A stretch of DNA of 64,000 nucleotides from Nageia nagi. Lineage: Eukaryota; Plantae; Pinophyta. Made by a program: the position numbers and the translations under genes. The stretch covers positions 57,288,001-57,352,000 of the forward strand of contig JBITNC010000001.1 in assembly GCA_050084985.1 (NCBI GenBank), read 5' to 3'. Shown in pieces: positions 1,318 through 31,024 of this stretch; the first letter of the stretch is position 1, and every line of letters begins with the position of its first letter. The notes under the pieces were generated by a model that ran no database searches, had not been told where the DNA came from, and saw only the letters and a program-made list of their open reading frames with translations.

Positions 1318-2154
1318 TTACTTGCTTATTTCAGTTCCTACTGGCCTCTTGTATGTGTACCAATGTGCAATAGCAAGATAAGCCAAAAAGTTCAGAGCGC
1401 TGAGATGGCCAACAACCAATAAAAGTAATCAATATGTCCGTAGTTCAGGTTATCAGGAATCCATCCCTGCTTTCCATTCTTTGTTGTAATATCAGATACA
1501 ATTGTAACAAGTAGACTGCTCAAGTAGTTCCCTAATGCCACGGTAGTAAGTGAAAGTGCACTCATCAAGCTTCTCATAGCATCAGGTGCTTGGTCGTAGA
1601 AGAACTCTAGTTGTCCTATAAATGTGAAAACTTCAGCAGCACCTATCAAGAAATATTGTGGAACTTGCCAAAAAATGCTTATGGGTACATGATCCAATTC
1701 ATAATAGTTATGCTTCTTGACAATGTCAAGTCTCTTGATCTCAACAATTGCTGCAACCGCCATGGAAAAAATAGAAATAACCAAGCCGATCCCCATACGT
1801 TGCAGTTGTGTAAAGCCTCTTTGATTCCCAGTGAATTTGCGTACAATTGGAACAATGAGACGGTCATAGACCGGAACCCAAAATATGACACTCAGAGTAT
1901 CAAATATAGACAATGATGCTGGTGGAATGTCGAAATCGCCAATTTTGATATTCATAGTATCACCTTGTAACACAAACAGTGTACTCATTTGACTGTAGAC
2001 AGTGGCAAATATAATCCCTGATGCCCAAATTGGAAGAATCCTTATAACTGCTTTAAGCTCCTCCACTTGAGTCACAGTGCAAAGTCTCCACGGGGTAAAG
2101 GAGCCTGCTTCATTTTTATCATTTCCAGTCTCTACTGCAGCTTTATCCAGAAAG
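1318..2154 (-). CDS. NPF8: NPF8 last coding exon (C-terminal MFS half), with frameshift near 1404
   Basis: Acceptor CTGCAG|C TTT CTG GAT AAA (FLDKAA). The frame stops at TGA 1394-1392 as written; the shifted frame continues [28 protein letters not shown] to TAA 1320-1318. Confidence 0.92.
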
Positions 2155-5100
2155 CTGCAGTCATAAAAATGCTGTTAGATGCTATTCCCATGAATAAATA
2201 TATTGTTTCTTATGACCCAAGCGCACTATAAATTGCTTGGACTTGCTAAGTACTAAAGATTTGTCACATGTGAAATGAAATACAAATATCAGAGCACAAA
2301 TACTAAAATGGTTAAGTACAATATGCAGCAGTTTGTTAACATTCGTAAGTAGAATGTAAAGTGCTTTTTAGAAAACTTCACACAATAACAGTTTGAATAA
2401 CGTGATGGTACAAGTAGTAGCTCATATAAAGCTACCATATCTCATTGAATGAAATACATAACAAACACTTGGAATATAAGGTACAAGGTCAGAAGAATAG
2501 AGATGCTCTACTAACTTTATGAATTCCACCATCTATCCCTGCATAATCAAGTAAATGAATTAATTTCTTTGTATCTAAACATTGTGGTGTTACGAATATC
2601 ACTCTAGTTGAACACCAGATCTTGCATGTGATTCAGTTGCTGTCTGCAGCCTTCTAAAAAAGTGAATTAATGTACCAATGGCATCTGATCTTGGGTAGGG
2701 TGGGGTCAAGTACACCTAAAATGAAGTAGATACTGCTCTTTAATATTTTTCAAATATTCAACAGTTTCCTTTGTTGATGCAACAGGCAGGTTGATAAAAT
2801 AAGTATACAGTAATAAACAAATTTTGTTAAGAGTTTGTAAGATACAAACACACATGCATTTACCTGGTTCTTCAAACCCTTTTATTGCTGCTATTAACTC
2901 AGGAGACTTATGCATTTACCAGGTTTTTCAAACTCTTTTATTGCTGCCACTAAATCCGGAGTTTCTATTGTTGATATGAGTTTTTCAAGGGTATAAGGAT
3001 AATGGTTTTTGGTCCTCACTCCTCAGTGCAAATGTATTTTCACCAATTTACATGATTTTAACCTATTTTGGCAATTTGTAGACTGGACCAAGATCTAGAA
3101 ACAGTAGCTGCATCAGAAATTTACTAAAGGTTAAAGCTGACATGCCTACAATGAAATGTTTTCCAACAAAATAAAGCAGAAAATAATGAAATCCTCATAG
3201 ATAACATTAGAGGCATTTATACACTGCATTCTCACAGGGACTTGTTGTAATCAAGCCACAGGCCTCTTCTGCATCTCCTTATTAAATATTAGTCTGCGTT
3301 CATAGTACGACTTCTTTGTCTGAAATAGGTGTTTGAGCTGCTAGCTTCAATGGTATTAAAGAAACCAAAAATATATAACTTCTTATAAAACAAAAATGTT
3401 AAGTTCTATTCGATATGAATTCAAGTTCTTTTAATTCTATGAATGGGCAATTGCTTAAATCAACTTAAAAAGATTTTAAAGGGGATTTTATATTGATCTT
3501 ACGAGAACCCTTCCGTGTGATCCAATTTCCGACTTCCTTTGATAGCAGATTCCTTATCTTGAACTTCATAAAGTAAAGATTTATCATCCGGTACCCGAAC
3601 ATGCCATTTTCGAAATGATGCAACTATGCTTTGGGCAATTCGGGTCAAAGGACTGCCTCCTGGCTTTTGATGTCGGTACAATTTCGTGCCTGAAAAAAAG
3701 CTACATATTGCCACTGCCATAGCCACTGTAGGAACTCCGAAACCCCATCCCCAGCCAACATTATCTTGAATCCAAACAAGAACACTGGACGATATGAGTG
3801 CACCAATGTTTATGGAAAAATAAAACCAATTGAAAAAGGAGCTCTTTTTCTTCTTTTCTTTATCATCCATTTCATCAAATTGGTCAGCACCAAATGATGA
3901 GACACATGGCTTGATACCACCAGTTCCAAGTGCAATAAGGTAAAGTGACAAAAATAAAACAGCAGTTTGGGATGTCGATGCATGACAGTTGGTGTCTAAA
4001 TCGTTCAGGCAGGGTGGCTTTAGTTTAGACACAGATGCAGACATGGTCAACAAGGCCATTCCCTGAAAAGTTACACAAAAAACTTCAGTTATATGTGCTT
4101 CCTAGTTCAGAAAAGCCCTATACCAAAAATGTGGTAAACACCTATATTGGCCAAAGGGGAAGGTTGCTTATATGTATTTAAGAATTAGCAACTTAATAAA
4201 TGAAAAATCTGGTTAAAATTCAAACATAACTTACCAAAAAATAGATAGTAGAAAAAATAGCGATTATCCAATATCGCCCCAAATATGCATCAGCTAGAAA
4301 AGCCCCAAGCAGAGGCATTATGTAACAAGTTCCTGACCAGTTGTTGACATTTTTCGATGCAGCAGCACTGCCCTGATTTAAACCCTTTTTTAAATAGTTC
4401 ACCAAGTTCGTACTGATCCCATAGTATGCTAATCTCTCACAACATTCATTACCTGCATCATAAATGAGTTGTTAGACCCCACAATTGCTGGTACTTGGAA
4501 CAAACAAGTCAATGTCATGTCAATGTGAACATGAATATATTTGAAAATTACATCTGAACAGTATGTCATATCTACATGCTTTTTAATTGAAAAAATATAG
4601 TGATTTCAATAAAATAGTGTGACATTTACCCAAAATAAATGGGCAAGCCTTCCAGCCCCCTGATTTTTTCTTGTTTGCTGGATTTCCACGAATATCCACA
4701 GATCCATCCTTAGTATATTCATCATCTGCATATTGTGTATCAGCCCTACTGTTTTTTTCCTCGGTCTTGATCTGCAAATTGATTTTATCATGAATCCATA
4801 AACACTGGATATGTTTGATGTTGAGTGTGTTCAATATATCTGAACTATGTTATTATTAGTACCAAACAAAATGTGGATATTATTCAAGGAGCTATTCAGA
4901 AGCAACACAAATAGAATCTTCTCAACAAATTGGTATTAAACAGAACTCTCTTCCTAGGAGATTATTCAAACATCAAAGAGTACCATGGTCAACGTCATTG
5001 CCATGCAGTAAGTGTGAACATAAGAACATATGTACATACATTTTACCATGAGGGTCATAGATATGGTTCAGACACAAGTTATGGATAAATTTCATTAAAT

Positions 5101-8100
5101 AAACATCACTAACCTTACAGGCACCAGAATTCAGATGGAATAACAGTGATTGACCAAGTCAGTAATAGCTTAATCCTCTCCAACCATTTTTGGCATCAAT
5201 GGCAGTCTAAGGGAAATTCCAACTAGTCTACATAGAAATGACAAGGGAAAGGTAATGTAGAAAACATACTATTCAAAACATCAAATGCCCTAGAGTATCT
5301 ATGTTTTTTCCCAAAAATTTAAAATGCAGAGTAAAACATTTGTCTGAAGACAACAGGGTGAATATAGTTTCAATTCTATAAATGTTCATACATGATGAGA
5401 GTCTGTGAAGCAAGGTTGTCAATTCAATTTTGCATATGTGTAGCCTGTCATATTTTCAATTGATATAAGGCAAAAATTGAATTGACATTTTTAATTTCAG
5501 AATATCCATAGGAATTGGTCTATCAGACCATATTATGCAAAAATGTTATTTGTTTGTACTAGCTAGCACTTCCTATTCTCTATTTGATTGAATTTACAGT
5601 TATTTATCAATTTTATGTCAAAAGGTTTTACAAGGTACTTGTTTGCAATATGACAAGAGAGTTCAGTCTTAGTTGGATTATATCGTAATGAGAAAAATGC
5701 CTCAATATTTTCTTTCCTCATCATTGACTAGTTAAACAATTTACAACGTCCGCTTTGATCTATTCATTCATGAGAGAAATGTTAGTAAAATATCTGTTCT
5801 TTGGCAGTTGGTTATTTTGGATAGATTTTTGGATTTTCCAATTGTTATACTTGTACGATATCTTATACATTGTTGTTTGTCATAGTGTGAGGTCAAAGAT
5901 TACCATGCTTATAACGGTAAAAGTTTTACATCCAAAGAAAATATCAAAGCATCTGCATTTGGGATCGTTTTTGCAAAACCCAGAAGTTAATCTAGTCACA
6001 AGGTGGGGGGGAGTTAACAGAACATCAGCTTATAATCATGATTGTCACGTAGAAAGTTCTTGGCAGTCCAAAATCATTGTAATTAGACGTTATTGGAGTT
6101 TTCCACCTCTCCAAGAGTTGTACTTGAAGTCGCTCAAATTCACATTTTATTCCTAGCTGTAAGTTAGTCCTAGCTATGTAATAGCTGATTTTCTTGCTGA
6201 AGTAATAGATAATTAGATAGGCTAAAACATAGGAGGGAGATTTCAAAGCCCAGTGTTACAAGTTTGAATTCCTTTTCCAAAATGAAAATAGTTTGTATCT
6301 CTTACTTCCAGCATAGAAGTTCTTATGTAAACTTTTTGGAAAGAATTTCAACATCTTTAATCCTGTGTCAGAGTAATTAAGCAAGATAACTCATGTGCCC
6401 TGTGCTACCAGCATCACTAAAAAGGTTTTTGAAGCAGAGATACGGAATAATAAGGTGAACATGAAGTTGTTATCTCACTTCTTTCAAAATTGTTATTCAA
6501 TTAAATTGAATGGAACTTCGAAGGACTGCTACATCAGGCCAAATAAATGCCCTAATACATCATTTCGACTTGAATTTTAACCATGGTGATTATCATAACC
6601 ATGGTCAGGCAAGCCACTTCTCTATCCCAGAGTTTGTTTGCAGAATTTGTTCTTGTTTCTGTATCAATGACAATTAGCATAATTTTAGGAACTTCCTTTA
6701 GAAAAGGCAAACCTAACTTAAGGTGAAAATGTAGTTTATGGATCTTCAGAATCATAGATACATCCCCTATATAATGCTAAAAATTGAAATGTATAATTAT
6801 ACAGAAATCTCTTAGAGAAACAAAACAGTATAATCAGTTCCAAATCTGTATATGGAATAGTTATGTCAAAATTGGAGATGGCAGGTAATAGATGAAGGCT
6901 GAATTTCATTTCCTGTTCCTCTCTTCCCGAAAGTTCCAAAATAAAAATAATAAAACTTTTTAAAATTTTCTTGGAATTTGTCAATTCTTGCAAATAAAAT
7001 CTAATTGTTTTTTCTTTCAAATCGTAAATAAATATAATAACTGCAGAGTTAGGGAAAAGTTTGAATCTACCACTCTCCAAGATATCCATTATTGAACTGT
7101 TGCAGCTAAAGTAGCCATATCAACAAGCTTTACGAGCCTGGTGTCTCAACCTTCTAATACTCATCATTTTCATATCAAAGGAAAGAAGTTGCCTTCAGAT
7201 TCTCAAAAGTAACCGCAAAAGCGGGCATTGAGTTGCATTAATCTATATGATCCTAGAGTTTATTCAATATTGTCTTTATTCTCAACAATAAAGTACAGTG
7301 ATTGAAAATTAAATATAAGGAAAAAGTAAAATATAATTAAAACTTATCAGAACAACTATCTAGTTGTGGATGAAACGAATTTGGAAAAATAATGATATAT
7401 TCACATGTGATAAAGTGGTATAAGGCAGAAAAGTCTCTAGTGCATGCTCACTAGCTTGGAAGGGTAAAATTGCACTTAGAAACTACACATGCATATATAC
7501 AAACTACTGAATTAGTTCAAAAGCTCTAAAACACAGATCTAGAGACAGGCCCTTAAGCCATGACTAATACCTAAATAAAATTTACCTTTGGCAGAATATG
7601 AGAATGTGAACCATTTACCTCCATGGGGGAAGCTCAACAACTGCATTAGTTTTGAAATGGTTGATTGTAACTTATGATCTATGCATGCATAACTATAAAG
7701 TCTTGCACTAGTTCAAAAACACCCATGACCATACTAGCTTGGAATTGTTAGCACTCATGAACTAAGCACGCATAAATATGAAATCCCGAACCAGTTCCAA
7801 AACCCCCAAACACAAATCTAGAGCTAGCATCTTCAGCCCTAACCAGTAACTTTATAAAATTTACCTTTGGCAAAATATGACAACATGGACCACTTACCCC
7901 AAAGGAGAAGTCCTGTGAGTGAATTACAATGAATCAAGAGCACTCAAATCACTAATACATTTGAATCATGGAATGCGAGGCAAGAAATGGCTATTTTTGG
8001 GAATTTCATTGAACTTCAACACAAAAAGGTTCATGCCTGAAAAGACTTCAATGCTCAAGAACCTGTTATGGTCCGCTTTCGTTTGATGCAAAGTTACAAA

Positions 8101-8647
8101 GTCCAAAACTAGTTAAAATATGCCCAAACACAGACATCAAGTACATCAAGGTTTAACCCTTACCTACCACCATCAAAGTTGCAGTTTAAACAAATGTAGA
8201 GAAACTTGGAAATAATTGAAATCCATAAGCAATGGCCTATAAACGATTCCTACTATAGCACATTCTTACATATCAAGAGTTCCTGATAAAGTGAATCATA
8301 AGAATTCCAAACAAGAAACTGGTTATTTTTCCGGCGAAACACTGAATTAGCCCATTTCCACTTGAAAATTATACATACAAACATACAATGTCTACCCACA
8401 AAATTCAACACGCTAGACAGTGACAGACTCCATGGAAAACACACTAGAGCATTGCCAAGTATCATGAATACCCAACTCCGAAAAAGGTAGACTTGGATCA
8501 TAACCGTAATTTTATAACTGCCCAAAAAAAAAAAATCAGAAATCGCAGCAATAACTCAAATAGCATTCAGAAATACAGAAAAGCTATAGTTATGACCTGA
8601 AAGCTTTTATGGGCATGGTGAGTTACCTTAGAGTTATGATCTTCCAT
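1318..8647 (-). CDS. NPF8: NPF8/PTR-family (POT, MFS) proton-dependent oligopeptide/nitrate transporter; model join(8647-8627,4771-4630,4452-4235,4062-3503,2154-1318), about 592 aa if the 1-bp deletion near 1404 is corrected (567 aa as written)
   Basis: Translation shows DGSVD..G.PA.K..GGWKAC, the proton-coupling motif [12 protein letters not shown] (ExxER), [86 protein letters not shown]. All introns are GT-AG with compatible phases (0,1,0,2). Confidence 0.93.
2853..2965. repeat. About 56-bp tandem duplication in the last intron
   Basis: ATGCATTTACC.GGTT.TTCAAAC.CTTTTATTGCTGC occurs twice. Confidence 0.8.
3503..4062 (-). CDS. NPF8: NPF8 constant exon
   Basis: TTTCAG|GGA ATG ... GGG TTC TC|GTAAGA; contains GTGGIKPC and FFNWFYF motifs. 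Confidence 0.95.
4235..4452 (-). CDS. NPF8: NPF8 constant exon with ExxER motif
   Basis: ATGCAG|GT AAT GAA TGT TGT GAG AGA ... TTT TTG|GTAAGT. Confidence 0.95.
4630..4771 (-). CDS. NPF8: NPF8 first constant exon (IKTEEK...KACPFILG); phase-0 acceptor, no internal in-frame ATG
   Basis: TTGCAG|ATC AAG ACC GAG ... ATT TTG G|GTAAAT; an upstream ATG exon is required. Confidence 0.88.
7450..7912 (-). repeat. Diverged about 280-bp tandem duplication in NPF8 intron 1; each copy ends in a CCAAAG|GTAAAT donor (candidate small exons 7624-7586 and 7912-7865)
   Basis: Shared blocks ACTAGCTTGGAA, AAACACA.ATCTAGAG and AAAATTTACCTTTGGCA.AATATGA at about 279-bp spacing. Confidence 0.7.
8627..8647 (-). CDS. 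Candidate first coding exon V1 (MEDHNSK), phase 0
   Basis: ATG GAA GAT CAT AAC TCT AAG|GTAACT, with TATATAAA about 112 bp upstream. Confidence 0.72.
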
Positions 8648-8758
8648 CGGAGAATTTCCTCTCAGAGCACAGGCAGTGAATGGAAACTTAAAATAAAGAA
8701 CTCAACAGTCCAAGCAAGGTTGTGGGACACAATACCCTATTGCTTCAAGCGTTGCATG

Positions 8759-8766
8759 TTTATATA
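8759..8766 (-). promoter_or_regulatory. TATA box (TATATAAA) for exon V1
   Basis: Consensus TATA on the minus strand about 112 bp upstream of the ATG at 8647. Confidence 0.55.
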
Positions 8767-8848
8767 TTATTCAATATTGATCCTAAATTGATCAATTGAG
8801 AAGTTGCTGAACCGTCCACATGTTGATCATTCAGCTTAGGTTGTGGGT

Positions 8849-8990
8849 GTTCTAAATTTGAGCCTTCTATATCTAACACTGGCAGAAATAGAGACTCCCG
8901 TCAATGCATGAGAAGTGGTTGTTCTAAATCTGAGCCTTCTATATTTAACTAACACTGGCAAAAATAGAGCTACCCGTCAAAGCATGAGAA
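8849..8990. repeat. About 72-bp tandem duplication in the proximal promoter of exon V1
   Basis: GTTCTAAAT.TGAGCCTTCTATAT...CTAACACTGGCA.AAATAGAG...CCCGTCAA.GCATGAGAA occurs twice. Confidence 0.85.
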
Positions 8991-11720
8991 TACAAAAGTG
9001 AAGACTTCCGAGGGTGAATTCAAATCGAATTCGAATATAAGTTTTTTACTGTTTCCTAAATATAAAAAAGTCTATATCTTCAATTACGTGCTGTGGAACT
9101 GGTTTCAAAATGTCTGTGCAGTCAAGGAATCTCATCACCATGAGTATGAAAAGAGTTGTCAAGCTCCAAACTCGAGAGGTGAAGTTGGAGTTGTTGAGAG
9201 TGGATTTGCTCCTGAATGATTGGGTGATCGTCATCACCTTTATCAAAAAGCACTTATTGTTGAGAAAATAACTTTCTCAACTTTTCACACCGGCCTAAAT
9301 AGATGAAAGTAAGATTCACAATATCTATGATTGATAAAATAAGTATTATAGATTTTTTTTTAATTATTTTTTTTGGGAGAAAAGTTTTTAGAATTAGATT
9401 TTATATGTATGGTTTTCTTCGAGAAAAGTTATTTGATACGCGTGCGTACTGGATTGAATTAAGTATATTTATAACATGTGAAAGGGAAGAGATTGGAATT
9501 TGAGATCTTCTTTTTCCAACTTGAAATTTTAACAACTATTTGCCTTTAACTCCTTTTACATATTTAGATATATTCATATATTTATCTTTGAAAATAAAAT
9601 ATTTTTAAAAAATCTAACAAAATATTAAATATACCAAATTTGTGTACTAGATTTCTTCAATATAATATAATACATATCATAATAATATCCCACATGTAGA
9701 CTTTGTAAAACAAGTCCATATATATCCTTCGTCTTTTAAGCAACAAGTTCCATGTCCTATGTCCCATTTTTTTTTGTCAAGGGCCATTATTTCTTCATCC
9801 ATGGCCTTTTTCAAGAACTTAGATTCTTTTGATTCACTTACCTCTTAAATTATTTGGGTTCATCATCATTAGTAAACAAATAAATGTAGAAAGATAAATA
9901 TAGATGAACTATACATTTGAGGTTATCTTCTCATACAACTTGATCTTTCCAATTGACTATCTTGGAATTCCCTTATCAATAAAGAAATTCAAACAAGATT
10001 ATTGGAAACTATTACTAGATATATCGTACTCCAAAATATCTCATTATACTCATAGATGGTAAGTTTGAGAAGCATGTTGATTATGTTAAAGATAATCTTA
10101 TAAGTATTACATATTTATAATTTTCAATCATTAAAACTCTAATGAAAATTTTGAAAGACTTGGATAAAATTATGAAGTATTTTTTAATGGTCAAATCTTC
10201 AATAAAATTAAAAAAAAAATACCTTAATTAACCAAGATAAAATTTGACAACCTAAAAACTAATGAAATAGAGATGAGATCATTAATAATCTTAAATAATC
10301 ACTCATTAATTGTAAAACTCTATTCACTACACAATATCATTATAGTGGTGCATTCTAGCAATTAAGTATTTCCCTACAACGCCTTTAAAAGGTGGATGAA
10401 GATGGTTCAATTATGAGGACCTTGAAATTAGGCACACCAATGAAAAAGAAATCTCTCTTTTCACACTGGGTAAAGACTAATAGGCGATATTTTGAAAGGA
10501 CCCTTGGGTCCAAGTCGAACCATTTATTATTCAATTTCAAAATATGACAAATCTAAAAGTTACCTTTTAACAACATGGATGAATACAAGTCCACTACAAC
10601 CTCAAATAATTAGAATAGCGTACATCTTTGATCCATTAATGTTGATCTTCAGAAGAATGGTTAGTGGACGTTCATTGAAGATAGAAAGAGCAATTTTAAA
10701 CGTTTTACAAACTAAACAGATTGAAGTAAACTAAACATTCATATCCGAAATGCTGTCACATGGCTTATAGTCCTGCCGACACGCGTTTAACATAATACGC
10801 CGTAGCTCATCAATCATATGCAAACAACAATCTTTTCACAAATAATAAGGAAAGAGCAATCATTTATAAACAATATAGCGTTGGAGCAAAGCCAGGGCCG
10901 TATTGAAATTTAGACCGTGGTATGATTAAAGGAGTTTGAGTTTGAAAAGAACTCTCCAATGTTGACGTCCAATTTCAAGTAGTGGAGGTTAGAAAGTGCT
11001 GTCAAATGTTGATGGGCACTCTCAAAATGGCCATTAATTAAAAGCTAGACTAACGCATCAAATTTATCTTCATCTTGCTTCGTGGCCTAACCCTAATTGA
11101 GTTTCATCCACAACTGTTGGCTAAATTCAAAGGAAAATGTTTACCAAGAGCCTTTTCTAGCATGGTTTCTCCTACCAAGTAAACAAATCTTGATTTAAAA
11201 TATGATTGCCTTTGTAAATCTAATTTTGTATTTAGCTTTTGCAAAATCTTTGAACTTAAGGAGCATAGCAGGTCTCACAGTAGGATTCATCAGTCAAACA
11301 CTTGATTTCCATGTGACCTTATAAAAGATCTTGTACATTAAAGGTAAATATATGGGATCTTAAAAAGAGGCTTTGTGAAGGTGGAAACACAAGTGGATGA
11401 TGTTCTCCTGGAAAGGCAGACCATGTGGGCTTGAAACAATCATACAACATCATTTTACCCAAAAACTCCATGAATTCTTTGGCAGGTTTGACAAATTGAC
11501 TGGAGATTTTACTGAGTTCGTATTCGAATGGACCAGTTCAATGTTCGTCATCAAATTCTATATTGAAAAAGCTAGTAAAGTATCTTTTGCTCTGCATAAT
11601 TGAGCTCCAAGTGGACCAACTTAGTATTCATTGTGGTTGTCACTGAAATTTTATTTTCTTCAAACAAGAAAGACATTGCTGCAGTAACTAATTTTTGCTT
11701 AAGAGACTCTAGAAGCTTAC

Positions 11721-11810
11721 CTCTCCATCCAAGCTATTTTCATCATCTCTCCTCTTCTGCAAATCCGTATATTCTGCTGATAGATTATCAGGAGCAGCAT
11801 TACTGGCCAT
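11721..11810 (-). CDS. Candidate alternative first coding exon A1 (MASNAAPDNLSAEYTDLQKRRDDENSLDGE), phase 0
   Basis: ACG ATG G context, 90 nt open, GAG|GTAAGC donor; paralogue A2 differs only by frame-preserving indels. Confidence 0.7.
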
Positions 11811-11954
11811 CGTTAGTGGTAGTCCGTTTAATGAAGTTGAATTACCAGATTGAAGCAATGGATTCCTAGTAGAGATTTGGGATTTTTATTATAGCCCAAT
11901 TGAAGGGCGGTCACTATGGTGATCGAAACGTGACTTGCGATGTGCTTGGTAGGA

Positions 11955-11961
11955 TTATATA
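11955..11961 (-). promoter_or_regulatory. TATA box (TATATAA) for exon A1
   Basis: About 145 bp upstream of ATG 11810, inside CpG-retaining sequence. Confidence 0.5.
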
Positions 11962-14670
11962 AGAGGGGCCAATTGCTTCAAAATCGGTAATCACGAATTA
12001 AAGACCGGTGTCTATTTCAAATGTCTAACCATAACCATAACGACGTTTGGATAGATGCTTTTGCTGGGCAGGACTCTCAAAAATCATAGAATACCCTTTG
12101 ATTAAGAACCAATCGCCTTCATCGCGAAGAAGGTTGAGTTGTATTCACATCAATATTCAATATTAACCTGCTCAGATTGGGATGAGTGTCCTGTTTTTTT
12201 ATAATATTATACGCGTCCGTAGTGGCAATCTGTACCCCCAAAACACGCATCAAATGATACCATTCACTATCGTGGCCTAGATTGGAAGAGTTTAATCTTT
12301 AGACTAAGTCATATTAAGAGCATATTCATGAAGGTTTAAGAGAAGAATATGTAATCCAAAAGAAGAATAAATGGATCACATTTACTTTGTACGAAATGAA
12401 GCACTATGTAGATTTATGAGAAGAATTTATGTTAAAGGGATTTGATATGTAATAAGACATTGGTCTTCTTATTATTTACAAATAATTTTTTTTTTCACAA
12501 AATTAATATTCATATTAAGAATTATTTCATAAATAGAAAAATATATTCATATATTTAATTATAAGAATTGTATAAAATTAGGAGAGTTACTATAAAATAA
12601 ACCACCTTTTAATCAATTTGAATTATAGAGATTATATTAAAATTAGGAGGCTTACTTAAATATGAAGATTCTTACATGTTCATTGTTTTTATGTGCAATG
12701 TATAGTTATTACGCCGAGAGGCGTTTCTACAGCTGCAGCATGGGGGTGGAGTGGGGGAGCAAAATGTTAGTCCGTCCGTTAAACAATTGGCAAGAAAATA
12801 ATTTTTTTAAAATTAAAATTATATAGCCAACTGAAATATTAAAAGACACATCTTTTCAAAAATTATTATATAAATGGAAGGAAGAATATCAAACATCATA
12901 AAAATTCATTCCCAAATCAATCGAGAGATGCAGTGAATTCGAACAAGCAAAGTTGGAACAAAAGATAAACAGAAGAGAACTTTAATTTTATTGTAAGTTA
13001 ATTCTCTGCTATTGTAAATATATTTTTACTGTAATATTTCTTATTTCTTATTTTACATACAATTTAGACTCTGAATTCTTTTGCGCTTCTTATCTTGCTG
13101 TTCGCATAAAACTTTATCAAAAAATGCTCTGAATTCACAAAGTTTTACATGTCTTGGTCTAACATATTCGTTGTTGATGCCTTCTTTTCATTAGAAAGTT
13201 ATTCAATAAAATCAACACAAGATCATAAAATCCCCATTATACCAAATTAATTTAGTTTATATTGTTTCCATCACAGTGGTTTTCAATTTGCCATGCATCT
13301 CCACCACGCAGTGCCAATGCACTTCTACTTTGATATTTGAATAAGTAGATTGATATTTATACTTTAACAGAGTCAATACAGTCATCCATAACATTATTTT
13401 ATATGGTTGTCATTACATGTAGTGAATCCACATTATCGCCATAGTTTTTTGCTGGGCTCGGTAAACCTCTTGCCGAAAACTGTTGTGTATGCGTTCTATC
13501 ATAATATTATAATTTTATGGTATAAGAAAAAAATATTATAGGTATAATAAAAAATATAACTAAAAAATTTCAAAAATATTTAAGAGGATGAAAAAATACA
13601 TAAATTTTATTTAAGAGAAGAAAGAACACAAGTTCAATCTCGAAATGATATCTCTCGATTTTTTTGATATATAAGGGGCTATATCAAAGCTAGTTTATAT
13701 ATTTTTTATTGTTTATTCAGTAATTAATAGATTTGTTAAATTTTTTATATTGCTTAATTTACTTCATTTTTTAAAGAAGACATAGAAACCTTAGATGATT
13801 TTTTTTCTTAATCAAAAATTGATTTTATCTACATTTAAAGATGAGAATTATCCTCCAAATACTAAGTTAATTTCCTTAAAATCAAATTTCAATCTTATTT
13901 AAAAAATATTTAATTATTATTATTTATTTAAATAATTTATATTAATAAAATTATTTTGAATTAAGAAATTAAAAATTATATTAATTATATTTTGTAAAAA
14001 AATAATATGAAAATAAAAATATATATCATTTATATATATAATATATATATATATAAATTTAGAATTCTATATTTTTCGTATCTTCTTTCGTATAGCTACC
14101 TCAAACTTAGAAGCTGCTCCTGACCTATCTCTTCTATCAAAATCATCTAACACTTACATCAATCCTATTTCATTCATTATAACTCAACAAATTTGTTTAT
14201 AGCAATTTTTTACGCTTTTAATACATAAAATTTGAAAATAAAAATTTAACAGTATTTTTCCAACCAATCCAGCTAATATCATATTTATCTCTTTCTTTGG
14301 TTGAGAGGCGCCTTGAAACTTGACTCTGTGCCATCAATGACATTAAAAGGACTCTGTTCCGTGAATCCAGTGGGTTTTAACATCACATACAATTAACAGC
14401 ACCATCCAGTTTTCAACATTGTCACTTTCCAACACTTCTAAACATTGTTGGTTTCTACTAATACTTCACCGGAAGCAATATCACTTTCTCCATAGTAATT
14501 TTGAGTTCTACTAAAAAACGTTTCAAACCATCCCCATTGAAATACCATTTCTTCATAATAAAGAGGATTTAACAATGACAAAACAAGAATAGAATTCACA
14601 AGTGAAACCCATCTAATTCGCATAAATGAATTTGGTTGCAGAGAATATAGGTATATGCTACAAGACTCAC

Positions 14671-14718
14671 CTGCCCTCCAACCCGTCCATGGACGCCATT
14701 TTCACCATTGGTGGCCAT
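14671..14718 (-). CDS. Candidate alternative first coding exon B1 (MATNGENGVHGRVGGQ), phase 0
   Basis: 48 nt from ATG to CAG|GTGAGT donor; conserved in paralogue B2. Confidence 0.68.
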
Positions 14719-17560
14719 TGGTTTCTGCAGTTTGGCTTCGAAATCTAACTTACGTGGTCTAAGGAAGCCTATTCTTGTCAAATAAGGAGTGGAGTCCACA
14801 AACAGTGTTCCTCCACGCGTTAAAAAGCAGGCGTGTTGTAGATTTGCTACAGCTATAGCAACTATTCAATGACATGAAGAGTCCGTCGTATAAACGTGTA
14901 GTTCATAAAGGAGTTCAAAGACTCTTGAAAAGGTGGGCGCAGATTTGGATTCGCGTGCAAAAGATGCTTTTCGTGCGAATCGCGATATTCCTGTGGATGG
15001 AAGTACTTGGCATTTATTGTAATCATCTTGCAAGATCTCGGTGTGCTGCTCCGCTTGGACTTTGTGTGTTTTTATTCTGTTGACTCGAAAAAACAGGCGA
15101 TCATGACAGCATCTCGTTGAGCTGATTTACAGTTTGAGCTATGGTCTACTAATTTGGCTTTCATGTACAAAGTGTTAGAGAAATAACGACACCAAATCAG
15201 CTCCGGATAATGCTGTTCAGATAACATGGATTTAGAGGAAACTATCTCCAACTTCAACTACAAGTATAGCTGATGTTTAATTTATGGCTTGATTGTATTG
15301 GATTGACTTTTTTTTTAATATGAAAATCACAGAAGGATTTTTGGTTTTAACGTTAAAGAAATTGGTAAAATTTGAAAACAAATTTTGTAATATTGATGAA
15401 TTTTCAACACCGGCTGCTTGGAAAATTGTTATTCTTCTTTTGCATTCCCGATTCCCCATCAATCTCATGCCATTTCAAAATTATTATTTTTTAACTTTGT
15501 TTTCATTGTGCTTTATGTTGAAGTCAATGTGGACTTCACTTAACTGAAATGGGATATATCATAGAGATACGAATTTTAAATGATAATAAAAAGTAGGAAG
15601 TATATTCCTCTATCCCGTGGGCGAAACTTTTGATGTAAAGCATTATTTAGTAATATAAAAACAATATATATATATATTTTTTTCAAATGTCAATTTCATA
15701 ATGTCATCTTCACGGGCCAGTTTCATGTTAAATTTTTTCTACATTGATATTTAATTTTCAATTTAGTATATTTTTTATATGTTATGATTATGATGGTATG
15801 TGACATATATATAATAAACATGTACTAAGAGTTTGAAAATATAACATATTGTATGATGTTAAATTATACAATAAACAAATATTAAAAGTTTGAAAATAGA
15901 ATATATTGTATTATATTATATCATAGATATAATATAAAAAGGTAATGAATGGTAAATTTGTAAAATAAGAGTCTAATATTCATGGTATTATTATTATATA
16001 TATAAATAGAAAGAAAATAGTATTATAATATACTTATTGAAATATCATCTTCTGTTTGAAGATTTGGGAGACACTCAAATGAAGTAAATGATATTTCAAG
16101 TTGAAATCCTACTCTTTAGCTATTGATGATTTGTCTCAATTGTAAAAATGAAGCTAATCTTGTACCCTTTCTTCCTTTATTGAAGGTTGGTTGGTTCCTC
16201 CAAAAATCACTAGACTTTATTGTTCTTCTTATCTTTTTTGGTAATCTTAAGGGTTGCTTATAATCCTTTTTTATCAATAAAAATCACCCTTTATTTATCC
16301 TTTACAAATAAAAACATAAATTTTGAAGTAATTTTTGAGAAGAAATTATTGGAATATATAATAAGTAATAAAATAAATTTAAGTCTATTTATAATAATAT
16401 TGATCAAGTTATTGCATAAATAGGATTTTTACACCAAAGTGGTTCTAAGGCTACAAATCAATGTATTATTAAGAGATTTTTTTAAAATGAGCAATTAAAA
16501 ACCATGTAAGAGTATTATAATTTAATTTTAATCTATATTGAAGAATTTAATACAATATTATCATTTTTTAAAAATTATTAAATTTCATTTTACATTACCT
16601 TTCAATAAAAATGTTATATTATTGATGAGCTTTAAATTAAGGGGTCATGTACTCCACACATAAATATGGCATAGGTTATCATCAAGGTGGAATAATTTTT
16701 TTACTATAAATTTTGTAAAAGTTGGTATCATATCTTCTAAGAAAAAAAGAAAAAAACTATTATAATTTTATTTAAATATACAAGGATTGATACCTAAATT
16801 GTAAGCTACAAGATTTGATGATTATAATCTGATTATAATGTTATTGATTGAATATTGAAATAAAAATACAATTTAAATTATATGATGTATTAAAAATAAT
16901 AAAAATCTATGTAGCTATAAAATATTATAAAATTAAAGCTTAACAAGTGCTTAAACATAAAACAAAAATCAAGTATAATAATCCATGTGAAAGGAAATTT
17001 TTTGATATGCTTTAGGAAATATAATGAACCAATATTAGTGCAAGGTCAAATTTGTTTCTAAAAATTATAAAAAGTAAAGTATGAAATTAATTTCATATAC
17101 TAACATAAAAAAAATAGAAAAATTCTAAAAAATAGGAAAAAGAAATAAATGCGTAATTTAAGGAGCATAGCAGGTCACATACTATCATTCACCAGTGGAA
17201 TACTTGATTTCCATGTGACCTTATATAAGATCTTAAGATCTAAAATGGACCTGAAATTCTTTATTGAGAGCAGGCATCAGAAGTGGAAGATGTTATCATG
17301 GAAGGACAGTTCATTTGACTGAAAAAGTTCATAAATGTTTTTGGCAGCCTTCACAAATTGCCTGGAAAGATTACCGAAAGATTACTGAAAAAGTTCAAAT
17401 CCTATATTGAAAAAGCTACTAAAGTATGTCTCCCACTCCATTATTCAGCTCGGAGTGGACCAACTTAATAGTCTTTGTGTCACTGAAATTTTAGTTTCCT
17501 CAACCAAGGAAGACATTGCTGTAGTAACTAAGTTTAACTTAAAAGACTCTTGAAACTCAC

Positions 17561-17653
17561 CTCTCCATTCAAGCTATTTTCATCATCTGCGCTGTTCTGA
17601 AAATCGCTATATTCTGACAGATGAACAGGAGCAGCATCTCTGTTACTTGCCAT
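17561..17653 (-). CDS. Candidate alternative first coding exon A2 (MASNRDAAPVHLSEYSDFQNSADDENSLNGE), phase 0
   Basis: 93 nt from ATG to GAG|GTGAGT donor; paralogue of A1. Confidence 0.68.
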
Positions 17654-18624
17654 CGATAGTGGTCGTCCGTTTGATAGTGTCAATTTATCAAAGGACCATC
17701 ACCATGCTGATGGGAAGCTGACTTACAATGTGCTTGATAAAGGGTATTTATTTCAAATGTCTGACGCGTTTAATCAGATTCTTTTATTTGGCAGGAATCT
17801 GAAAAGCAGAAACGTACAGAATACCCTTTGATTAAGACCCAATCCCATTGATCCGGAAGTGGGTTGGTAGGATTCATATTATATGCAGGGGGAGGAGTAA
17901 TATGTACTCCAAAACATTATTGTAGCGTAAGTTGCAGGACTTTGTCCAGACTCTTCACGACATGACTCTTGAGTTGAGTTGACTCTATAAGTAGTAGATG
18001 CATATTATTATTTATTTATCAACAAGTCACATTACAGATCAAGAATTTATTCTTGAGATGTATGACAAAGAATCTATGTAACTTAACATATGTAATTGAC
18101 TATAATAATTTCTAATCTTATTTAGATATTATTATTTAATTTATTATTTCATCATATTTAATATTTATAAATATTGTATTTTTTACATAAATAAGATCAA
18201 TGATGAATGGTCATACCTCCTCTAAATACTGCAAACTTTTCACTTAAAAAAGAATAGCATTGATCTTGTTCGAAATAATTTAATGTTAAAAAGTAAAGTA
18301 ACTTCTTAATATTAGGAGTAATTGATTCATTTTAGTTGTTTTTAATGCTACATATTTATTGTTATTTTTTATTGTTAATATTTTTATTATGTGTATAAAT
18401 GAAATAATATTGTTAATAAATTATTTATTTATGTTAAGGGAGTTGGTGAAGTAATAAAAATCTTCTACTGAAAGTTAAATCTCAATACTTCTAGCAATTT
18501 ATGATAATTGGTATACAAGTCTCCATTGAGCATCTTAGAGTATGCTTTTATCAACTTAGGGTTGAAGCAGATCACCAAATACTAAGAGAGGAGCTGACAT
18601 GTATGTTTTGTTACTTATCAAAAG

Positions 18625-20445
18625 TGAAATGAAATATTATTAATGTCCGCGGTGGGCCAAATATGATCTAAGGGATTGAAAAAGTAGAACAATGAAAACT
18701 ACAAGTAGGGGGGCCAAAAGTGCCCAATCAAAGAGCAAACAAAAATAAATACAAAAAAGTACAAATCATGCATTGAGATAAAAAACATCATCCATAAGAA
18801 AAATTCTCTCTTAATTTCTCCCAACATCGGATGTTGATGAATCAATGCTAAAAAAATCATTGATTTGGCTCTATCTATCATTAATTTGGAGTCCCAAAGA
18901 TCTGCGAGTACATTATCTAGTAGCCCTATTGATGTCTAGATGATCTGGTGCTTATCATTTTTGGCCAATATTTATATCATCCCTTGGTAAATTAGAGCTA
19001 GTGAAGTAGGATGTGATAAGCTGAGATTGTTGAAGGTGCAAGACACTTAGATGAAAGCTCTTTTGCCAACAAAATTGGGTTGCTTCTCTGATATAAAGCC
19101 CTAAGCAATGTTGGTTCTCATAATAGAAAAAGGTGAATATAGAGAGTGAATCACCCCTAAAGAGGTAATAGAACTTATCTTGAATCTCACAGTAGATATT
19201 CGGACAAGGAAAAATAAAATGGTGTAGATTTTCTACTTCCCTAGGGAACAAAACATACATATTCGTTTCTCTCTTGGAATATGATGATCTTTTTCAACCA
19301 ATAGTTGATGGGAGCATACTTGAAGTTGCCCAATGGAGACCTGTATGCCATGTGTCAAAGCTACTGGAGATATTGAGGAAGAACTATTTGACTATCCTAG
19401 ATATGTAGAAAGTGCTCATGATAAAATGTTAATGGGGGAGAGGGGGTAATGGGAGATATCCATATGCAACAGGTATAATGAAGAACGATGTCCTTTCGAA
19501 TCTCAAGAATTATTTTTTCCTTCTTATTATATGATGGAACTCTAAGAGAGTAAGATAGAAGTTTGTCAATATGAATCTGAATACTTTCTAAAAGTATAAA
19601 TACCTTAGAATGCTAACCCCTTTTCCTCCTCCTAAGACTTAACGAAAGGTCCATTGAAGAGCATAAAGCAAGGTAAGGATACCTTCTACACCTAGAGGGG
19701 GTGTCTACCAAAGTGTGAAGCCTATAAAGATAAGTGATGATATTTAAAATAATCTCCAACCAAATGGGTGAAGCTCCAAACTCTACAAGGATAATCAAAT
19801 GAGGAATTGTGCACTTGCATTATATAAACCTTTATGGAAAAAGAGTTTGTATTCTTTCAACATGAGACCATTCAGCTGGACCAAGACTAGGACCCCATAC
19901 TTTCAATCCGTAGGTAACAGTTGGCTTCACTAAGGTGTCAAAAATCTTCATCTGGGATGGGATGTCCTAGAAATGAGCTCTAAAGCAACTCCATTCTAGT
20001 AAGGAAACTATTGCATATCCCTTACAAATGTGAGCTTAGGCAAATGGCTTCATCTAAAATGTAGGTCCAATGAAAAGAACTCCAAGGTATACATAGGACT
20101 TGTTGATCTCTACATCTCATCCTTGAATTTGGAAATGAGGATGAGATACAAAATCCTTGGTAGTATTAAACACCATAACCTTGGTCTTGGTAAGTTTAAT
20201 TGAAAATTATTTTCAAGCATAAAAATCAACTAATGCATCCAATTGATGTTGGAATCCCTCAACAGTTGAAGCTAAAAGAATAACATCATCAGCAAACTGA
20301 AGGATAGAGATCAAGACATTATGAAGTAAGCATCCATCATTTGCATGTGTATGTTCTTGGAGAAAAGACTCAAGCTCATCTATGAATATCCCAAAAAGTG
20401 TGGGGAAAAGGGGGCAACCTTGTTTCACTCCTATGGTGCTAAGAA
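18625..20445 (-). mobile_element. 5'-truncated degenerate non-LTR retrotransposon (LINE, RTE/RTEX-like): RT, C-terminal Cys/His finger and (ATTTC)n-type tail
   Basis: KQGCPLFPTLFGIFIDEL...QFADDVILL (RT motifs); RICMFC...EVENLHHFIFPCP; 3' end ...AATATTTCATTTCA. Confidence 0.85.
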
Positions 20446-20449
20446 TGAA

Positions 20450-20885
20450 TATCGGTTTATTTTTTGTTGTCCCATATACTAAAAGATTAGAGGTAGATTT
20501 TATTATCTCTTCAGAAGTGACTTACTCTCTATATCAACATTTTGTAGTTATAAGGACCAACATTATTTCAGACTTTACAACAGAGAAGTTATCTAATTTT
20601 GTCTCTCTTATATAAGTGCCTCTCATCCTGCATAATCTTACCTTATCACAAACTACTTCACCCAAGGTAACTAGAAAACAAATGGATAAAGACAAAACAA
20701 TGATTTTTTTTGAAAATAAAACATTTGTATATATGATGTTAGAAGAAACTAATTCAGAAATGATTTTTTCTCTTTAGTTAGGCACCTTTGGCCCACTTAC
20801 TTGTAGTTTTCACTATCCTAATTTTCCAGTACCTTGGTTCACTTTGACCCACCGTGAACATCTATAATATTTCATTTCATTTCTC
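20450..20885 (+). mobile_element. Short 3' fragment of the same LINE family in opposite orientation
   Basis: KIRGRFYYLFRSD... aligns with EIQDKFYYLFRGD... of the minus copy; 20770-20880 is a diverged reverse complement of 18625-18735 and ends ATTTCATTTCATTTC. Confidence 0.8.
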
Positions 20886-22199
20886 TATTTTATATGTTAA
20901 AAACATATAAAATAGTGTAAATACCCTTCTTCAAAACTTAAAAAACTATTTACCAATATTTAACAAAATATTAATAAACCAATATGATTCAAAAGAAGAG
21001 TAAATAATCAACCATATCTTATATAAAGATGAAGTACTATGTAGATCTTAGAGAGAACTTACCTATATACTCACCTATTCTAATTAAAGGAATTGTATAA
21101 GAATTAAGAGGGTTATTATAAAATAAATCTTACATTTAACTTAATAAGAAATTTTATATATCTTCATTATTTCTATGTACATTGTATGATTATCTTTCAA
21201 TTATTTTCATACTAGATAATTAATAAAATCATTTAACTTTTTACATTACACAATTTATTCCATGCTTCTAGAAAAAACATAAAAACCTTAAACCATTTCT
21301 TATTTATTTTTTTATGAAAGATTAATTTAATTTATATTTACATATAAAATTATCCTTCAAATACTAGATTAATTTCCCTAAAATTAATTTTAATTATTAT
21401 TAAAAAGATATTTAATTAATTTTTATTAACTTAATAATTCATATTAATATTTTTTATTAAAAAATATTAAAATTATATTAAATATATTTTGTAAAAAATG
21501 TATTTAAAACAGTTATGTAAGATTCAAAAATATCTTTTATGTTTATGAATAATTTAGAATTCTACATTTCTAAAAATCATCCTTCCGAATAATTCGCTTC
21601 ATAAGCTACTGAAGGAAAAAACTATTTCCGAACCGTTCAATTTGCGTGGATGAATCTACTACAACTCAAAATAATATTTTTTTATCACGATGTTTCAGAT
21701 ATTGAAGAAAGGAAAATTTGGACACAAAACCTCAACAGTATTTCCCTTTTTTTTTTTTTGAAGTACTGTTACAATTAAGTCTTTCACATCATGCCTTTTG
21801 GATCCCATCCAACTATTTCGTTCGTTCAGACACACGCCTTGGACCATCGACGTAGAGGGAAGAAGAAAACGAGGAGATGGTTGGATGAATTCAATGGGTT
21901 TAAATTAAAAAATCACATCACATAATGAGACTAACAAACAACACCATGGAGTTTTCAACATTGTCACTTTCTAACACTTTCACACTTCTAAACTTGTTGG
22001 TTGAAGCAAATATCACTTTCTCCACAGTTTTTGAGTCCTAGTCGGAAACGTTTCAAGCCATCTCCATTTCAAATATCATTTCTTTACAATAAAGGAGGAT
22101 TTCAATGACAAAACAACAAGAGAATTCGCAACAAAACTCATCTAATTTGCATTAATTAATGTGATTGCAGAAAATATAGGTATATGCTAAAAGACTCAC

Positions 22200-22247
22200 C
22201 TGGCCTCTAACCCGTCCATGGACGCCATTCTCACCATTGGTAGCCAT
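22200..22247 (-). CDS. Candidate alternative first coding exon B2 (MATNGENGVHGRVRGQ), phase 0
   Basis: 48 nt from ATG to CAG|GTGAGT; differs from B1 by three synonymous changes and one G>R change. Confidence 0.68.
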
Positions 22248-22868: not shown

Positions 22869-23215
22869 TAATTGTTTTGATCAGTATACTATGAGCTACA
22901 ACATAAAATAAACAAAACAATATTTTTATTTAAATCTGAAAGAAGATTAATCAATCTTAGTATAATCTCGAAGTGAGATAATCTTTACATCCGAAAAAAA
23001 TTACGAACTTCATCAATACCTAACATGATATCGATATTGTATAATTGTTTTGATCAGTATACTATTAGCTACAACACAAAATACACATAACAATATTTCT
23101 ATTTAAAATGGAAAGAAGATTGATCAATCTTAATATAATCTTGAAGTGAGATTAACCTTTACATCCGAAAAAAATAACGAACTTCATCAATACCAAACAT
23201 GATATAGATATCATA
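22869..23215. repeat. About 173-bp tandem duplication
   Basis: ATTGTTTTGATCAGTATACTAT...ACGAACTTCATCAATACC.AACATGATAT occurs twice. Confidence 0.9.
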
Positions 23216-30690: not shown

Positions 30691-30759
30691 AGATTTAGGA
30701 TTGACTATGTAGTTGTTATTTTTGTATGTTAGTTGTAGATCATGATATATGTACATATG

Positions 30760-31020
30760 GATATTGGAAATTATTGTGGACTTTGGACATTATTTTTATG
30801 ATGTTGTTATGCTATTATTGTGGACTTTGGATATTGTTATATCATGGACTTTGGACATTGTTATTGTGGACTTTGGAAATTGTTATTGTGGATTAGATAC
30901 TATTATTACATGGAATACATGGAATTTGGACACATGTTATTATGTTATTACATGGACTACATGGAGTTTGGACACATTATTTTTATGAAGTTGTTATTTT
31001 ATTACATGGACTAGATGTTG
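30760..31020. repeat. Degenerate about 22-bp tandem repeat (GGACTTTGGACATTGTTATTGT)
   Basis: Repeated TGGACTTTGGA...TTATT units. Confidence 0.8.
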
Positions 31021-31024
31021 TTAT

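What the first reader, a model, noticed from the sequence alone, without database searches (positions are those of the whole stretch)
4630..22247. Candidate variable-first-exon array feeding one NPF8/PTR transporter (UGT1A/protocadherin-like architecture in a plant)
Seen: the first constant exon (4771-4630) opens at a phase-0 acceptor and has no in-frame ATG. On the same strand upstream are five separate exons, each ATG-initiated, stop-free, a multiple of 3 long and closed by a strong donor: V1 8647-8627 MEDHNSK|GTAACT; A1 11810-11721 (30 aa)|GTAAGC; B1 14718-14671 (16 aa)|GTGAGT; A2 17653-17561 (31 aa)|GTGAGT; B2 22247-22200 (16 aa)|GTGAGT. All join 4771 in frame, and I found no other coding body between 22.2 kb and 4.8 kb to receive them. 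V1 and A1 have their own TATA boxes. Established: arrays of promoter plus first-exon cassettes spliced to shared constant exons are known for vertebrate UGT1A and clustered protocadherins, whereas plant NPFs normally diversify by whole-gene duplication. Inference: one transporter core is expressed from up to five promoters with different cytosolic N-termini.
Basis: partly seen in the sequence, partly recalled or inferred. Interest (0 to 1): 0.92.

Follow-up and report, generated by a model that had tools for sequence, protein, structure and literature searches.

The report
Peptide transporter with spare first exons
An expressed plant peptide-transporter gene uses one short first exon in all the RNA data I could examine. 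Four upstream look-alike start exons sit in unmethylated, promoter-like islands and may be rarely used alternative starts, but this is unproven.

Summary
On the minus strand lies an NPF8/PTR transporter gene, about 80% identical to Araucaria NPF8. Its exon 2 (4771-4630) has no in-frame ATG. Five upstream ATG mini-exons end at GT donors in frame with it. The window holds no other NPF body.

Spliced RNA contigs from four runs join exon 2 only to V1. None shows a loose end at 4771. V1 is therefore the working first exon, and A/B usage was not seen.

The number of such mini-exons equals chance (7 against 5.2±2.2). What is not chance:
- B2-A2-B1-A1 is an old tandem duplication, and both copies of A and of B keep ATG, frame and donor (joint neutral probability about 0.01-0.03).
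- Exon indels are 6 and 3 nt.
- 9 of 16 substitutions fall at third codon positions.
- In a genome with CpG o/e 0.10-0.24, the 600 nt upstream of A1 and B1 keep o/e about 0.95, above the proven V1 promoter.

My verdict is that these are plausible (about 0.4) but undemonstrated alternative promoter/first-exon cassettes. The UGT1A/protocadherin analogy is overstated, because the exons are tiny, carry no domain and mostly show no detectable homology between families.

The parts
1392..2154 (-). NPF8 last coding exon (E5), up to a premature TGA at 1394-1392
   Evidence: Translation and tblastn give 80% identity to Araucaria P0164 residues 303-587. The RNA contigs run on from 3503 into this exon (loose ends begin with the exon 5 sequence).
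1321..1404 (-). Conserved C-terminal 28 codons ([28 protein letters not shown]) in another frame, which implies one base is missing near 1404-1410
   Evidence: tblastn gives 89% identity to the Araucaria C-terminus in a different frame. The relative P0107 reads WLLAILSSLNFL across the site.
3503..4062 (-). NPF8 exon 4
   Evidence: Joint 4061>4234 in all four RNA runs. 85% identity to P0164.
4235..4452 (-). NPF8 exon 3 (starts [11 protein letters not shown], the ExxER motif)
   Evidence: Joints on both sides in all four RNA runs. Translation.
4630..4771 (-).
   Evidence: RNA joints 4771>8597 and 4771>8627.
8597..8647 (-). Coding part of the verified first exon V1. ATG at 8647. The short form ends at 8627 (MEDHNSK). 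The long form ends at 8597 (adds [10 protein letters not shown], in frame).
   Evidence: Joint 4771>8597 in X1, X3 and X5. Joint 4771>8627 in X4.
8648..9212 (-). 5' leader of the V1 exon. Contigs reach 8696, 8807 (adapter), 8887 and 9212. TATATAAA lies at -119.
   Evidence: Table 8 and loose ends..
11721..11810 (-). Candidate first exon A1 (30 aa, GAG|GTAAGC, Kozak A at -3 and G at +4)
   Evidence: No RNA data were obtained for this place.
11811..12410 (-). CpG-retaining island upstream of A1 (20 CpG, o/e 0.96)
   Evidence: Background 600-nt windows have mean 1.3 and maximum 8 CpG.
14671..14718 (-). Candidate first exon B1 (16 aa, CAG|GTGAGT, Kozak A at -3 and G at +4)
   Evidence: The peptide resembles gymnosperm NPF8 N-termini.
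14719..15318 (-). CpG-retaining island upstream of B1 (22 CpG, o/e 0.93), the strongest in the window
17561..17653 (-). Candidate first exon A2 (31 aa), a paralogue of A1
   Evidence: Upstream 600 nt has CpG o/e 0.61.
22200..22247 (-). Candidate first exon B2 (16 aa), a paralogue of B1 (15 of 16 aa identical)
   Evidence: Upstream 600 nt has CpG o/e 0.49.
18481..20882 (-). Decayed retroelement debris with a reverse-transcriptase fragment, inserted between B2 and A2. It accounts for the longer distal unit.
   Evidence: RVT_1 hit for the ORF at 20213-20428. Internal inverted matches.
10501..11000 (.). Further CpG-retaining island with no candidate exon (14 CpG, o/e 0.91)
21601..22100 (.). Further CpG-retaining island just downstream of B2 (12 CpG, o/e 0.80)

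Best explanation
Shown: a transcribed NPF8-type (NRT1/PTR family 8) proton-coupled peptide transporter gene lies on the minus strand. Its working first exon is V1. V1 is spliced to exon 2 at 4771 from either of two donors (8627 or 8597), giving N-termini of 7 or 17 residues.

Inferred: the four upstream cassettes (B2-A2-B1-A1, an old tandem duplication of a B-A unit) are additional promoter/first-exon modules of the same gene.
- Each would start transcription in its own hypomethylated island.
- Each would translate from its own ATG.
- Each would splice its cap-proximal donor to the same phase-0 acceptor at 4771, skipping the downstream first exons, which have no acceptors.
- The result would be the same transporter core with 16- or 30-31-residue cytosolic N-terminal tails.

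Their use would be minor, or confined to tissues or conditions not in the four RNA samples. The proximal pair (A1, B1) looks the more alive. It has better start-codon context and full CpG retention, while the distal pair has lost CpG and has taken up a retroelement.
For: Gene and V1:
- Exon-by-exon tblastn gives 80% identity to Araucaria NPF8.
- Named homologues are NRT1/PTR FAMILY 8.1 with PF00854.
- Spliced contigs in four runs join 4771 to 8597 or 8627.

Cassettes:
- A1/A2 and B1/B2 are duplicates.
- ATG, open frame, length in threes and GT donor are kept in all four. The neutral-retention simulation gives 0.05-0.11 for A and 0.13-0.24 for B.
- The two indels inside the A exon are 6 and 3 nt. 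Only 2 of 20 flank indels are multiples of 3.
- 9 of 16 substitutions fall at third codon positions, P=0.05. B has 3 synonymous and 1 replacement change.
- CpG o/e upstream is 0.96 (A1), 0.93 (B1), 0.61 (A2) and 0.49 (B2), against 0.50 for the proven V1 promoter and 0.10 for 24-64 kb. All five exceed the background maximum.
- No other coding body is available on this strand.
- B begins like gymnosperm NPF8 proteins: MATNGENG against MAAHSENG, MAANGD and MTANGEIG.
- Mutually exclusive first exons exist in plants (PMC2174465).
Against: - No A or B junction and no loose end at 4771 appears in the four RNA assemblies. In three of them one contig runs straight from exon 2 into V1.
- Sequence identity in the exons is no higher than in the adjacent 'intron' (A 86% against 84%; B 92% against 83-86%). 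Conservation runs 270-470 nt past the donors.
- A shows no amino-acid constraint (2 synonymous against 8 replacement codon differences).
- The statistical signals are small and were found after the fact.
- ATG-ORF-donor candidates are as frequent as chance.
- No related genome or transcriptome could be examined.
- The tails carry no known motif. None has a dileucine (D/E)X3-5L(L/I) signal.
Confidence: 0.4

Rival explanations
1. The A/B islands are regulatory DNA of the NPF8 gene (enhancers or upstream promoters), or start sites of short unstable or non-coding transcripts. They are kept unmethylated for that reason. A consensus donor close to a start site is common for such transcripts. The ATG-initiated frames would be incidental and never reach exon 2.
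For: - CpG retention shows protection from methylation, not coding.
- Two further CpG islands (10501-11000 and 21601-22100) have no candidate exon at all.
- Conservation is not limited to the exons.
- A shows no amino-acid constraint.
- RNA shows only V1 joined to exon 2.
- Candidates of this form arise by chance at about 5 per 18 kb.
Against: - Both indels in the A exon are in frame.
- Substitutions show a third-position excess.
- ATG and frame are kept in all four copies.
- The B peptide resembles NPF8 N-termini.
- All four ATGs have G at +4, and A1 and B1 have A at -3.
Confidence: 0.3
2. The cassettes are dead relics. They would be 5' ends (promoter plus exon 1) of former NPF8 paralogues, or partial duplications of the gene's 5' region, later duplicated once more. 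They would still look intact only because too little time has passed.
For: - Exon identity equals flank identity.
- Neutral retention is unlikely but not impossible, at about 0.006-0.026 jointly.
- The distal unit is decaying. B2 has half the CpGs of B1, with 6 against 2 deamination-type differences, and there is a retroelement insertion.
- No RNA evidence of use.
- Gene fragments are common in very large plant genomes (my own knowledge).
Against: - A1 and B1 upstream regions show no CpG loss at all (o/e about 0.95), in a window where unprotected DNA is at 0.10.
- No trace of decayed NPF bodies lies next to any cassette.
- In-frame indels and the third-position excess.
Confidence: 0.2
3. A and B are first exons of a different gene. 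Its remaining exons would be too small or too diverged to recognise here, or would lie beyond the start of the window.
For: The pieces of constraint evidence are silent about the acceptor. A has no convincing similarity to NPF8 N-termini.
Against: - No ORF with a family match lies between 9 and 23 kb apart from a reverse-transcriptase fragment.
- Nothing was found in Rfam, tRNA or fold tests.
- Splicing past a complete expressed gene would be unusual.
- The frame fits exon 2.
Confidence: 0.07

Closest known systems
Plant type I alternative first exons (mutually exclusive first exons with shared downstream exons; Chen et al. 2007, PMC2174465)
   Same: The proposed layout matches: separate promoters, separate first exons each with its own ATG, and one shared acceptor. 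That survey lists 137 rice and 99 Arabidopsis clusters, of which 53 and 20 change the N-terminus.
   Different: Here there would be five or six first exons rather than the usual two. Four of them would come from tandem duplication, spread over 17 kb. Only one of them is backed by transcripts.
Vertebrate variable-first-exon arrays (UGT1A, clustered protocadherins; PMC1885805, PMC3325998)
   Same: Tandem promoter-plus-first-exon cassettes lie upstream of shared constant exons. The cassettes partly arose by duplication (A1/A2, B1/B2).
   Different: - Those variable exons are large and encode the substrate-binding or extracellular domain. Here they encode 7-31 residues with no domain.
- A, B and V1 show no mutual homology.
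- Splicing of the extra cassettes to the constant exon is not shown.
Gymnosperm NPF8 genes (Araucaria cunninghamii P0164, Cryptomeria japonica SUGI_0864700 P0172, Taxus NPF P0173)
   Same: - The transporter core is 68-80% identical to the window.
- The N-termini have the same build, about 9 residues and then V/IK-x-EEK...DEYT-DGSVD. V1 (MEDHNSK / ...KSFQ) matches MEEDNKNSQ, MDEEFNEFQ and MAAHSENGE.
   Different: Nothing is known from these records about extra upstream first exons.
N-terminal sorting signals of Arabidopsis NPF8.3/8.4/8.5 (dileucine (D/E)X3-5L(L/I), tonoplast against plasma membrane; Komarova et al. 2012 as cited in PMC5383025)
   Same: It shows that the short cytosolic N-terminus of NPF8 transporters can decide the membrane they go to. 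This is the most obvious way alternative first exons could matter.
   Different: None of the V1, A or B peptides contains LL or LI, so this particular signal is absent. Any functional difference between the tails is unknown.

Membership tests
NPF8 / PTR (proton-dependent oligopeptide transporter, Pfam PF00854) | Sequence membership of the transporter core | tested here: met
   Exon peptides align at 80-85% to Araucaria NPF8. The nearest named proteins are NRT1/PTR FAMILY 8.1 and carry PF00854 and PF07690.
NPF8 / PTR (proton-dependent oligopeptide transporter, Pfam PF00854) | ExxER motif at the start of TM1 | tested here: met
   Exon 3 begins [11 protein letters not shown].
NPF8 / PTR (proton-dependent oligopeptide transporter, Pfam PF00854) | Uninterrupted reading frame through TM12 | tested here: not met
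   One base is missing near 1404-1410. This gives a TGA at 1394-1392, and the conserved last 28 codons continue in another frame. It may be an assembly error, and I could not check it in reads.
Variable-first-exon array (UGT1A / protocadherin type) | Several first exons, each with its own promoter | tested here: inconclusive
   CpG-retaining islands lie upstream of all five. A TATA motif is present at V1 and A1 only. No start-site data exist for A or B.
Variable-first-exon array (UGT1A / protocadherin type) | Each variable exon spliced to the same first constant exon | tested here: inconclusive
   Only V1 is joined to 4771 in the contigs of four RNA runs, and there is no loose end at 4771. Contigs cannot show the absence of rare forms.
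Variable-first-exon array (UGT1A / protocadherin type) | Variable exons are paralogues of one another | tested here: not met
   A1/A2 and B1/B2 are paralogous pairs (z 145 and 138). V1, A and B show no similarity above shuffles (z below 3).
Variable-first-exon array (UGT1A / protocadherin type) | Variable exon encodes a functional domain that diversifies the protein | tested here: not met
   The exons encode 7-31 residues. They have no Pfam match and no dileucine motif.
Plant type I alternative first exons | Transcripts with mutually exclusive first exons sharing the downstream exons | tested here: inconclusive
   Transcript evidence exists for V1 only, in two donor variants. A and B remain candidates.

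The most novel reading that the evidence does not exclude
One plant transporter core is expressed from up to five promoters arranged as tandemly duplicated promoter/first-exon cassettes. This would give up to six cytosolic N-termini, counting the two V1 donors. The CpG-island cassettes A1 and B1 would be used mainly in cell lineages or conditions absent from ordinary RNA samples, such as meristem or germ line, where hypomethylation leaves its mark on the DNA. It would be a plant counterpart, in miniature, of the vertebrate variable-first-exon arrays.
Probability: 0.35. Interest if true: 0.7.

Novelty: new variant of a known kind. Interest (0 to 1): 0.45.

Why it matters
If the cassettes are used, this would be an unusually large coding first-exon array for a plant gene, partly built by duplication. 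It would offer a way to give one transporter several regulatory programmes and several N-terminal tails. In NPF8 proteins that tail is known to steer membrane targeting. It would also show that CpG-retaining islands in a heavily deaminated genome can point to promoters that routine RNA sampling misses. If they are not used, the locus is an ordinary expressed NPF8 gene with decaying or regulatory upstream duplicates. The case would then be a warning that ATG-ORF-donor mini-exons occur at chance frequency.

Tried and rejected
- A second NPF body to receive A/B: none anywhere in the window.
- Another gene between 9 and 23 kb: only a reverse-transcriptase fragment was found. A1, A2 and the read-through ORFs have no Pfam match.
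- An RNA gene or structured RNA in the conserved 'intron' blocks: no Rfam hit at E<=1, no tRNA, and fold z-scores of -0.98 and +0.72.
- LTR pairs as the source of the repeats: rejected. The two pairs interleave (B2 A2 B1 A1), which fits a tandem duplication, not nested elements.
- Common origin of V1, A and B: no DNA similarity.
- Annotated or assembled proteins of this species with alternative N-termini: none in the 5.8-billion-protein collection. The best full-length relative is 80% identical and the best fragment 87%.
- Cryptomeria 'isoform X1/X2' records turned out to be different genes, 69% identical.
- Metagenome scans: one for a back-translated B exon found nothing. One for exon 2 found only distant plants.
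- Dileucine sorting motif in the tails: absent.
Full report
**What is there.** The minus strand of 1.3-8.7 kb carries a transporter gene.
- Exon-by-exon translation and tblastn define exon 2 (4771-4630), exon 3 (4452-4235, beginning [11 protein letters not shown]), exon 4 (4062-3503) and exon 5 (from 2154).
- A whole-library HMMER search with exon 5, and two word-index searches, place it in NRT1/PTR family 8 (PF00854).
- The closest full-length protein is an Araucaria cunninghamii NPF8, about 80% identical. Other gymnosperm NPF8 proteins follow: Ginkgo at about 75%, and Cryptomeria, Taxus and Pinaceae at about 68-71%.
- Nothing above 87-88% identity exists in the collections, so the species and its close kin are not represented there.
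All searches were made exon by exon, by reference.

**The observation.**
- Exon 2 opens after ...TTTGCAG in phase 0 and has no Met.
- V1, A1, B1, A2 and B2 are ATG-initiated, free of stops, multiples of three and followed by GT donors. B1 and B2 have the perfect CAG|GTGAGT.
- No other NPF-like coding sequence exists in the 64 kb.
- The mere presence of such mini-exons is not remarkable. A scan of the same strand between 4772 and 23000 finds seven candidates, against 5.2±2.2 in shuffled sequence.
- Two of those seven (9234-9088 and 7624-7586) are plainly not used as exons in the RNA contigs.

**RNA evidence.** The run search returned runs whose contigs turned out to be spliced, and therefore RNA. 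I laid four of them, from four studies, on 3450-9449.
- All four show the exon 4/3 and exon 3/2 joints.
- It is joined to 8597 in X1, X3 and X5. This second donor (CAG|GTCATA) adds 30 nt in frame ([10 protein letters not shown]).
- The V1 exon reaches upstream to 8696, 8807 (where an adapter follows), 8887 and 9212.
- No run has a loose end at 4771.
- In X3, X4 and X5 a single contig runs from exon 2 into V1.

V1 is therefore the working first exon. Any use of A or B is minor in these samples or absent. Contigs drop rare variants and the tissues are unknown to me, so this is not proof of absence. I had only one read-laying run and could not look at the cassettes themselves.

**The cassettes.** B2-A2-B1-A1 is an old tandem duplication of a B-A unit.
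- Blastn gives about 71% identity over 590-680 nt, and 80-86% in the best-aligned 100-nt blocks.
- The distal unit is lengthened by retroelement debris with a reverse-transcriptase fragment.
- A, B and V1 units show no similarity to one another.
- Conservation is not confined to the exons. It continues 270-470 nt past the donors. Exon identity (A 86%, B 92%) is not clearly above that of the next 100 nt (84% and 86%).

**Signals of constraint.**
- In a neutral simulation with the local substitution and indel rates, an intact ATG, frame and donor survive in only 5-11% of trials for A and 13-24% for B. The two exon sequences in that script were typed rather than read from file.
- The two indels inside the A exon are 6 and 3 nt. 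Only 2 of 20 indels in the flanks are multiples of three.
- Nine of 16 substitutions fall at third codon positions (P=0.05). B has three synonymous changes and one replacement, while A shows no amino-acid constraint.
- All four ATGs have G at +4. A1 and B1 also have A at -3.
- The B peptide begins like gymnosperm NPF8 proteins: MATNGENG against MAAHSENG, MAANGD and MTANGEIG. The match is short and weak (E 0.1-0.4 in a small set). A has no convincing match.

Each signal is small and was looked for after the fact, but they all point the same way.

**CpG.** This is the strongest new evidence.
- The window is severely CpG-depleted, with o/e 0.24 overall and 0.10 in 24-64 kb. There, 600-nt windows hold on average 1.3 CpG and at most 8.
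- Of 354 CpGs, 265 lie in 1-24 kb.
- The eight CpG-dense patches in the window are two NPF exons and six patches in the cassette region.
- The 600 nt upstream of A1 and B1 hold 20 and 22 CpGs (o/e 0.96 and 0.93), so there is no depletion at all.
- A2 and B2 hold 9 and 12 CpGs (o/e 0.61 and 0.49). The proven V1 promoter holds 11 (o/e 0.50).
- B2 has half the CpGs of B1, with six deamination-type differences against two.

Long-term protection from methylation directly upstream of the candidate exons is what active promoters would leave. It does not fit inert relics, at least for A1 and B1. It does not show what the transcripts are. Two further islands (10501-11000 and 21601-22100) have no candidate exon.

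**Weighing.**
- Alternative promoter/first-exon cassettes of the NPF8 gene explain the frames, donors, start contexts, CpG islands, lack of any other coding body and the B similarity. They lack any transcript evidence. I give this about 0.4.
- Regulatory islands or starts of non-coding transcripts with incidental frames: about 0.3.
- Decaying relics of duplicated 5' ends: about 0.2.
- First exons of another gene: below 0.1.

**Comparison with what is known.**
- Mutually exclusive first exons with shared downstream exons are documented in rice and Arabidopsis, some changing the N-terminus (PMC2174465). The kind is therefore known in plants.
- Vertebrate UGT1A and protocadherin arrays (PMC1885805, PMC3325998) share the layout. 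Their variable exons are large, domain-encoding and all paralogous. Here two of those defining features were tested and not met, so this is not a member of that class, only a distant analogue.
- The N-terminus of Arabidopsis NPF8.3/8.4/8.5 carries a dileucine tonoplast signal (PMC5383025). None of the tails here has LL or LI.

**What could not be done.**
- Metagenome scans found no close relative.
- Rfam, tRNA and fold tests of the region found nothing.

**Verdict.** V1 is confirmed, and refined by a second donor. The four extra cassettes are credible but unproven alternative starts.

Noticed in passing
window 1392-1410 (minus strand): One base is missing in the last exon. The frame hits TGA at 1394-1392, while the conserved last 28 codons (89% identical to Araucaria) continue in another frame to TAA at 1323-1321. 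It is either a very recent truncating mutation in an expressed gene or an assembly error.
   Followed up: partly
window 8597-8627 (minus strand): The first exon has an alternative 5' splice site. The donor at 8597 is used in three RNA runs and the donor at 8627 in one. The 30 extra bases are in frame and add [10 protein letters not shown].
   Followed up: yes
window 8648-9212 (minus strand): One RNA contig (X5) carries at least 565 nt of leader upstream of the V1 ATG, with several upstream ATGs and about 2% differences from the window. Start sites seem spread over several hundred bases, upstream of the TATA box.
   Followed up: partly
window 10501-11000 and 21601-22100: Two CpG-retaining islands (o/e 0.91 and 0.80) have no candidate exon. 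They could be enhancers or further start sites.
   Followed up: no
window 1-24000 against 24001-64000: There is a sharp domain boundary in CpG content. 265 of 354 CpGs lie in the first 24 kb (the gene and cassette region). The remaining 40 kb is at o/e 0.10.
   Followed up: partly
window 22869-23217: Two adjacent direct repeats of about 175 nt, 90% identical, lie just upstream of the B2 island.
   Followed up: no
window 30001-34000 and 38001-40000: Blocks of strong and opposite GC skew (+0.30 to +0.46, then -0.37) fall inside the stretch that another note calls a Sola2-like transposon. They are probably its inverted arms.
   Followed up: no
window 18481-20882: Decayed retroelement with a reverse-transcriptase fragment and internal inverted matches, inserted between B2 and A2.
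   Followed up: partly
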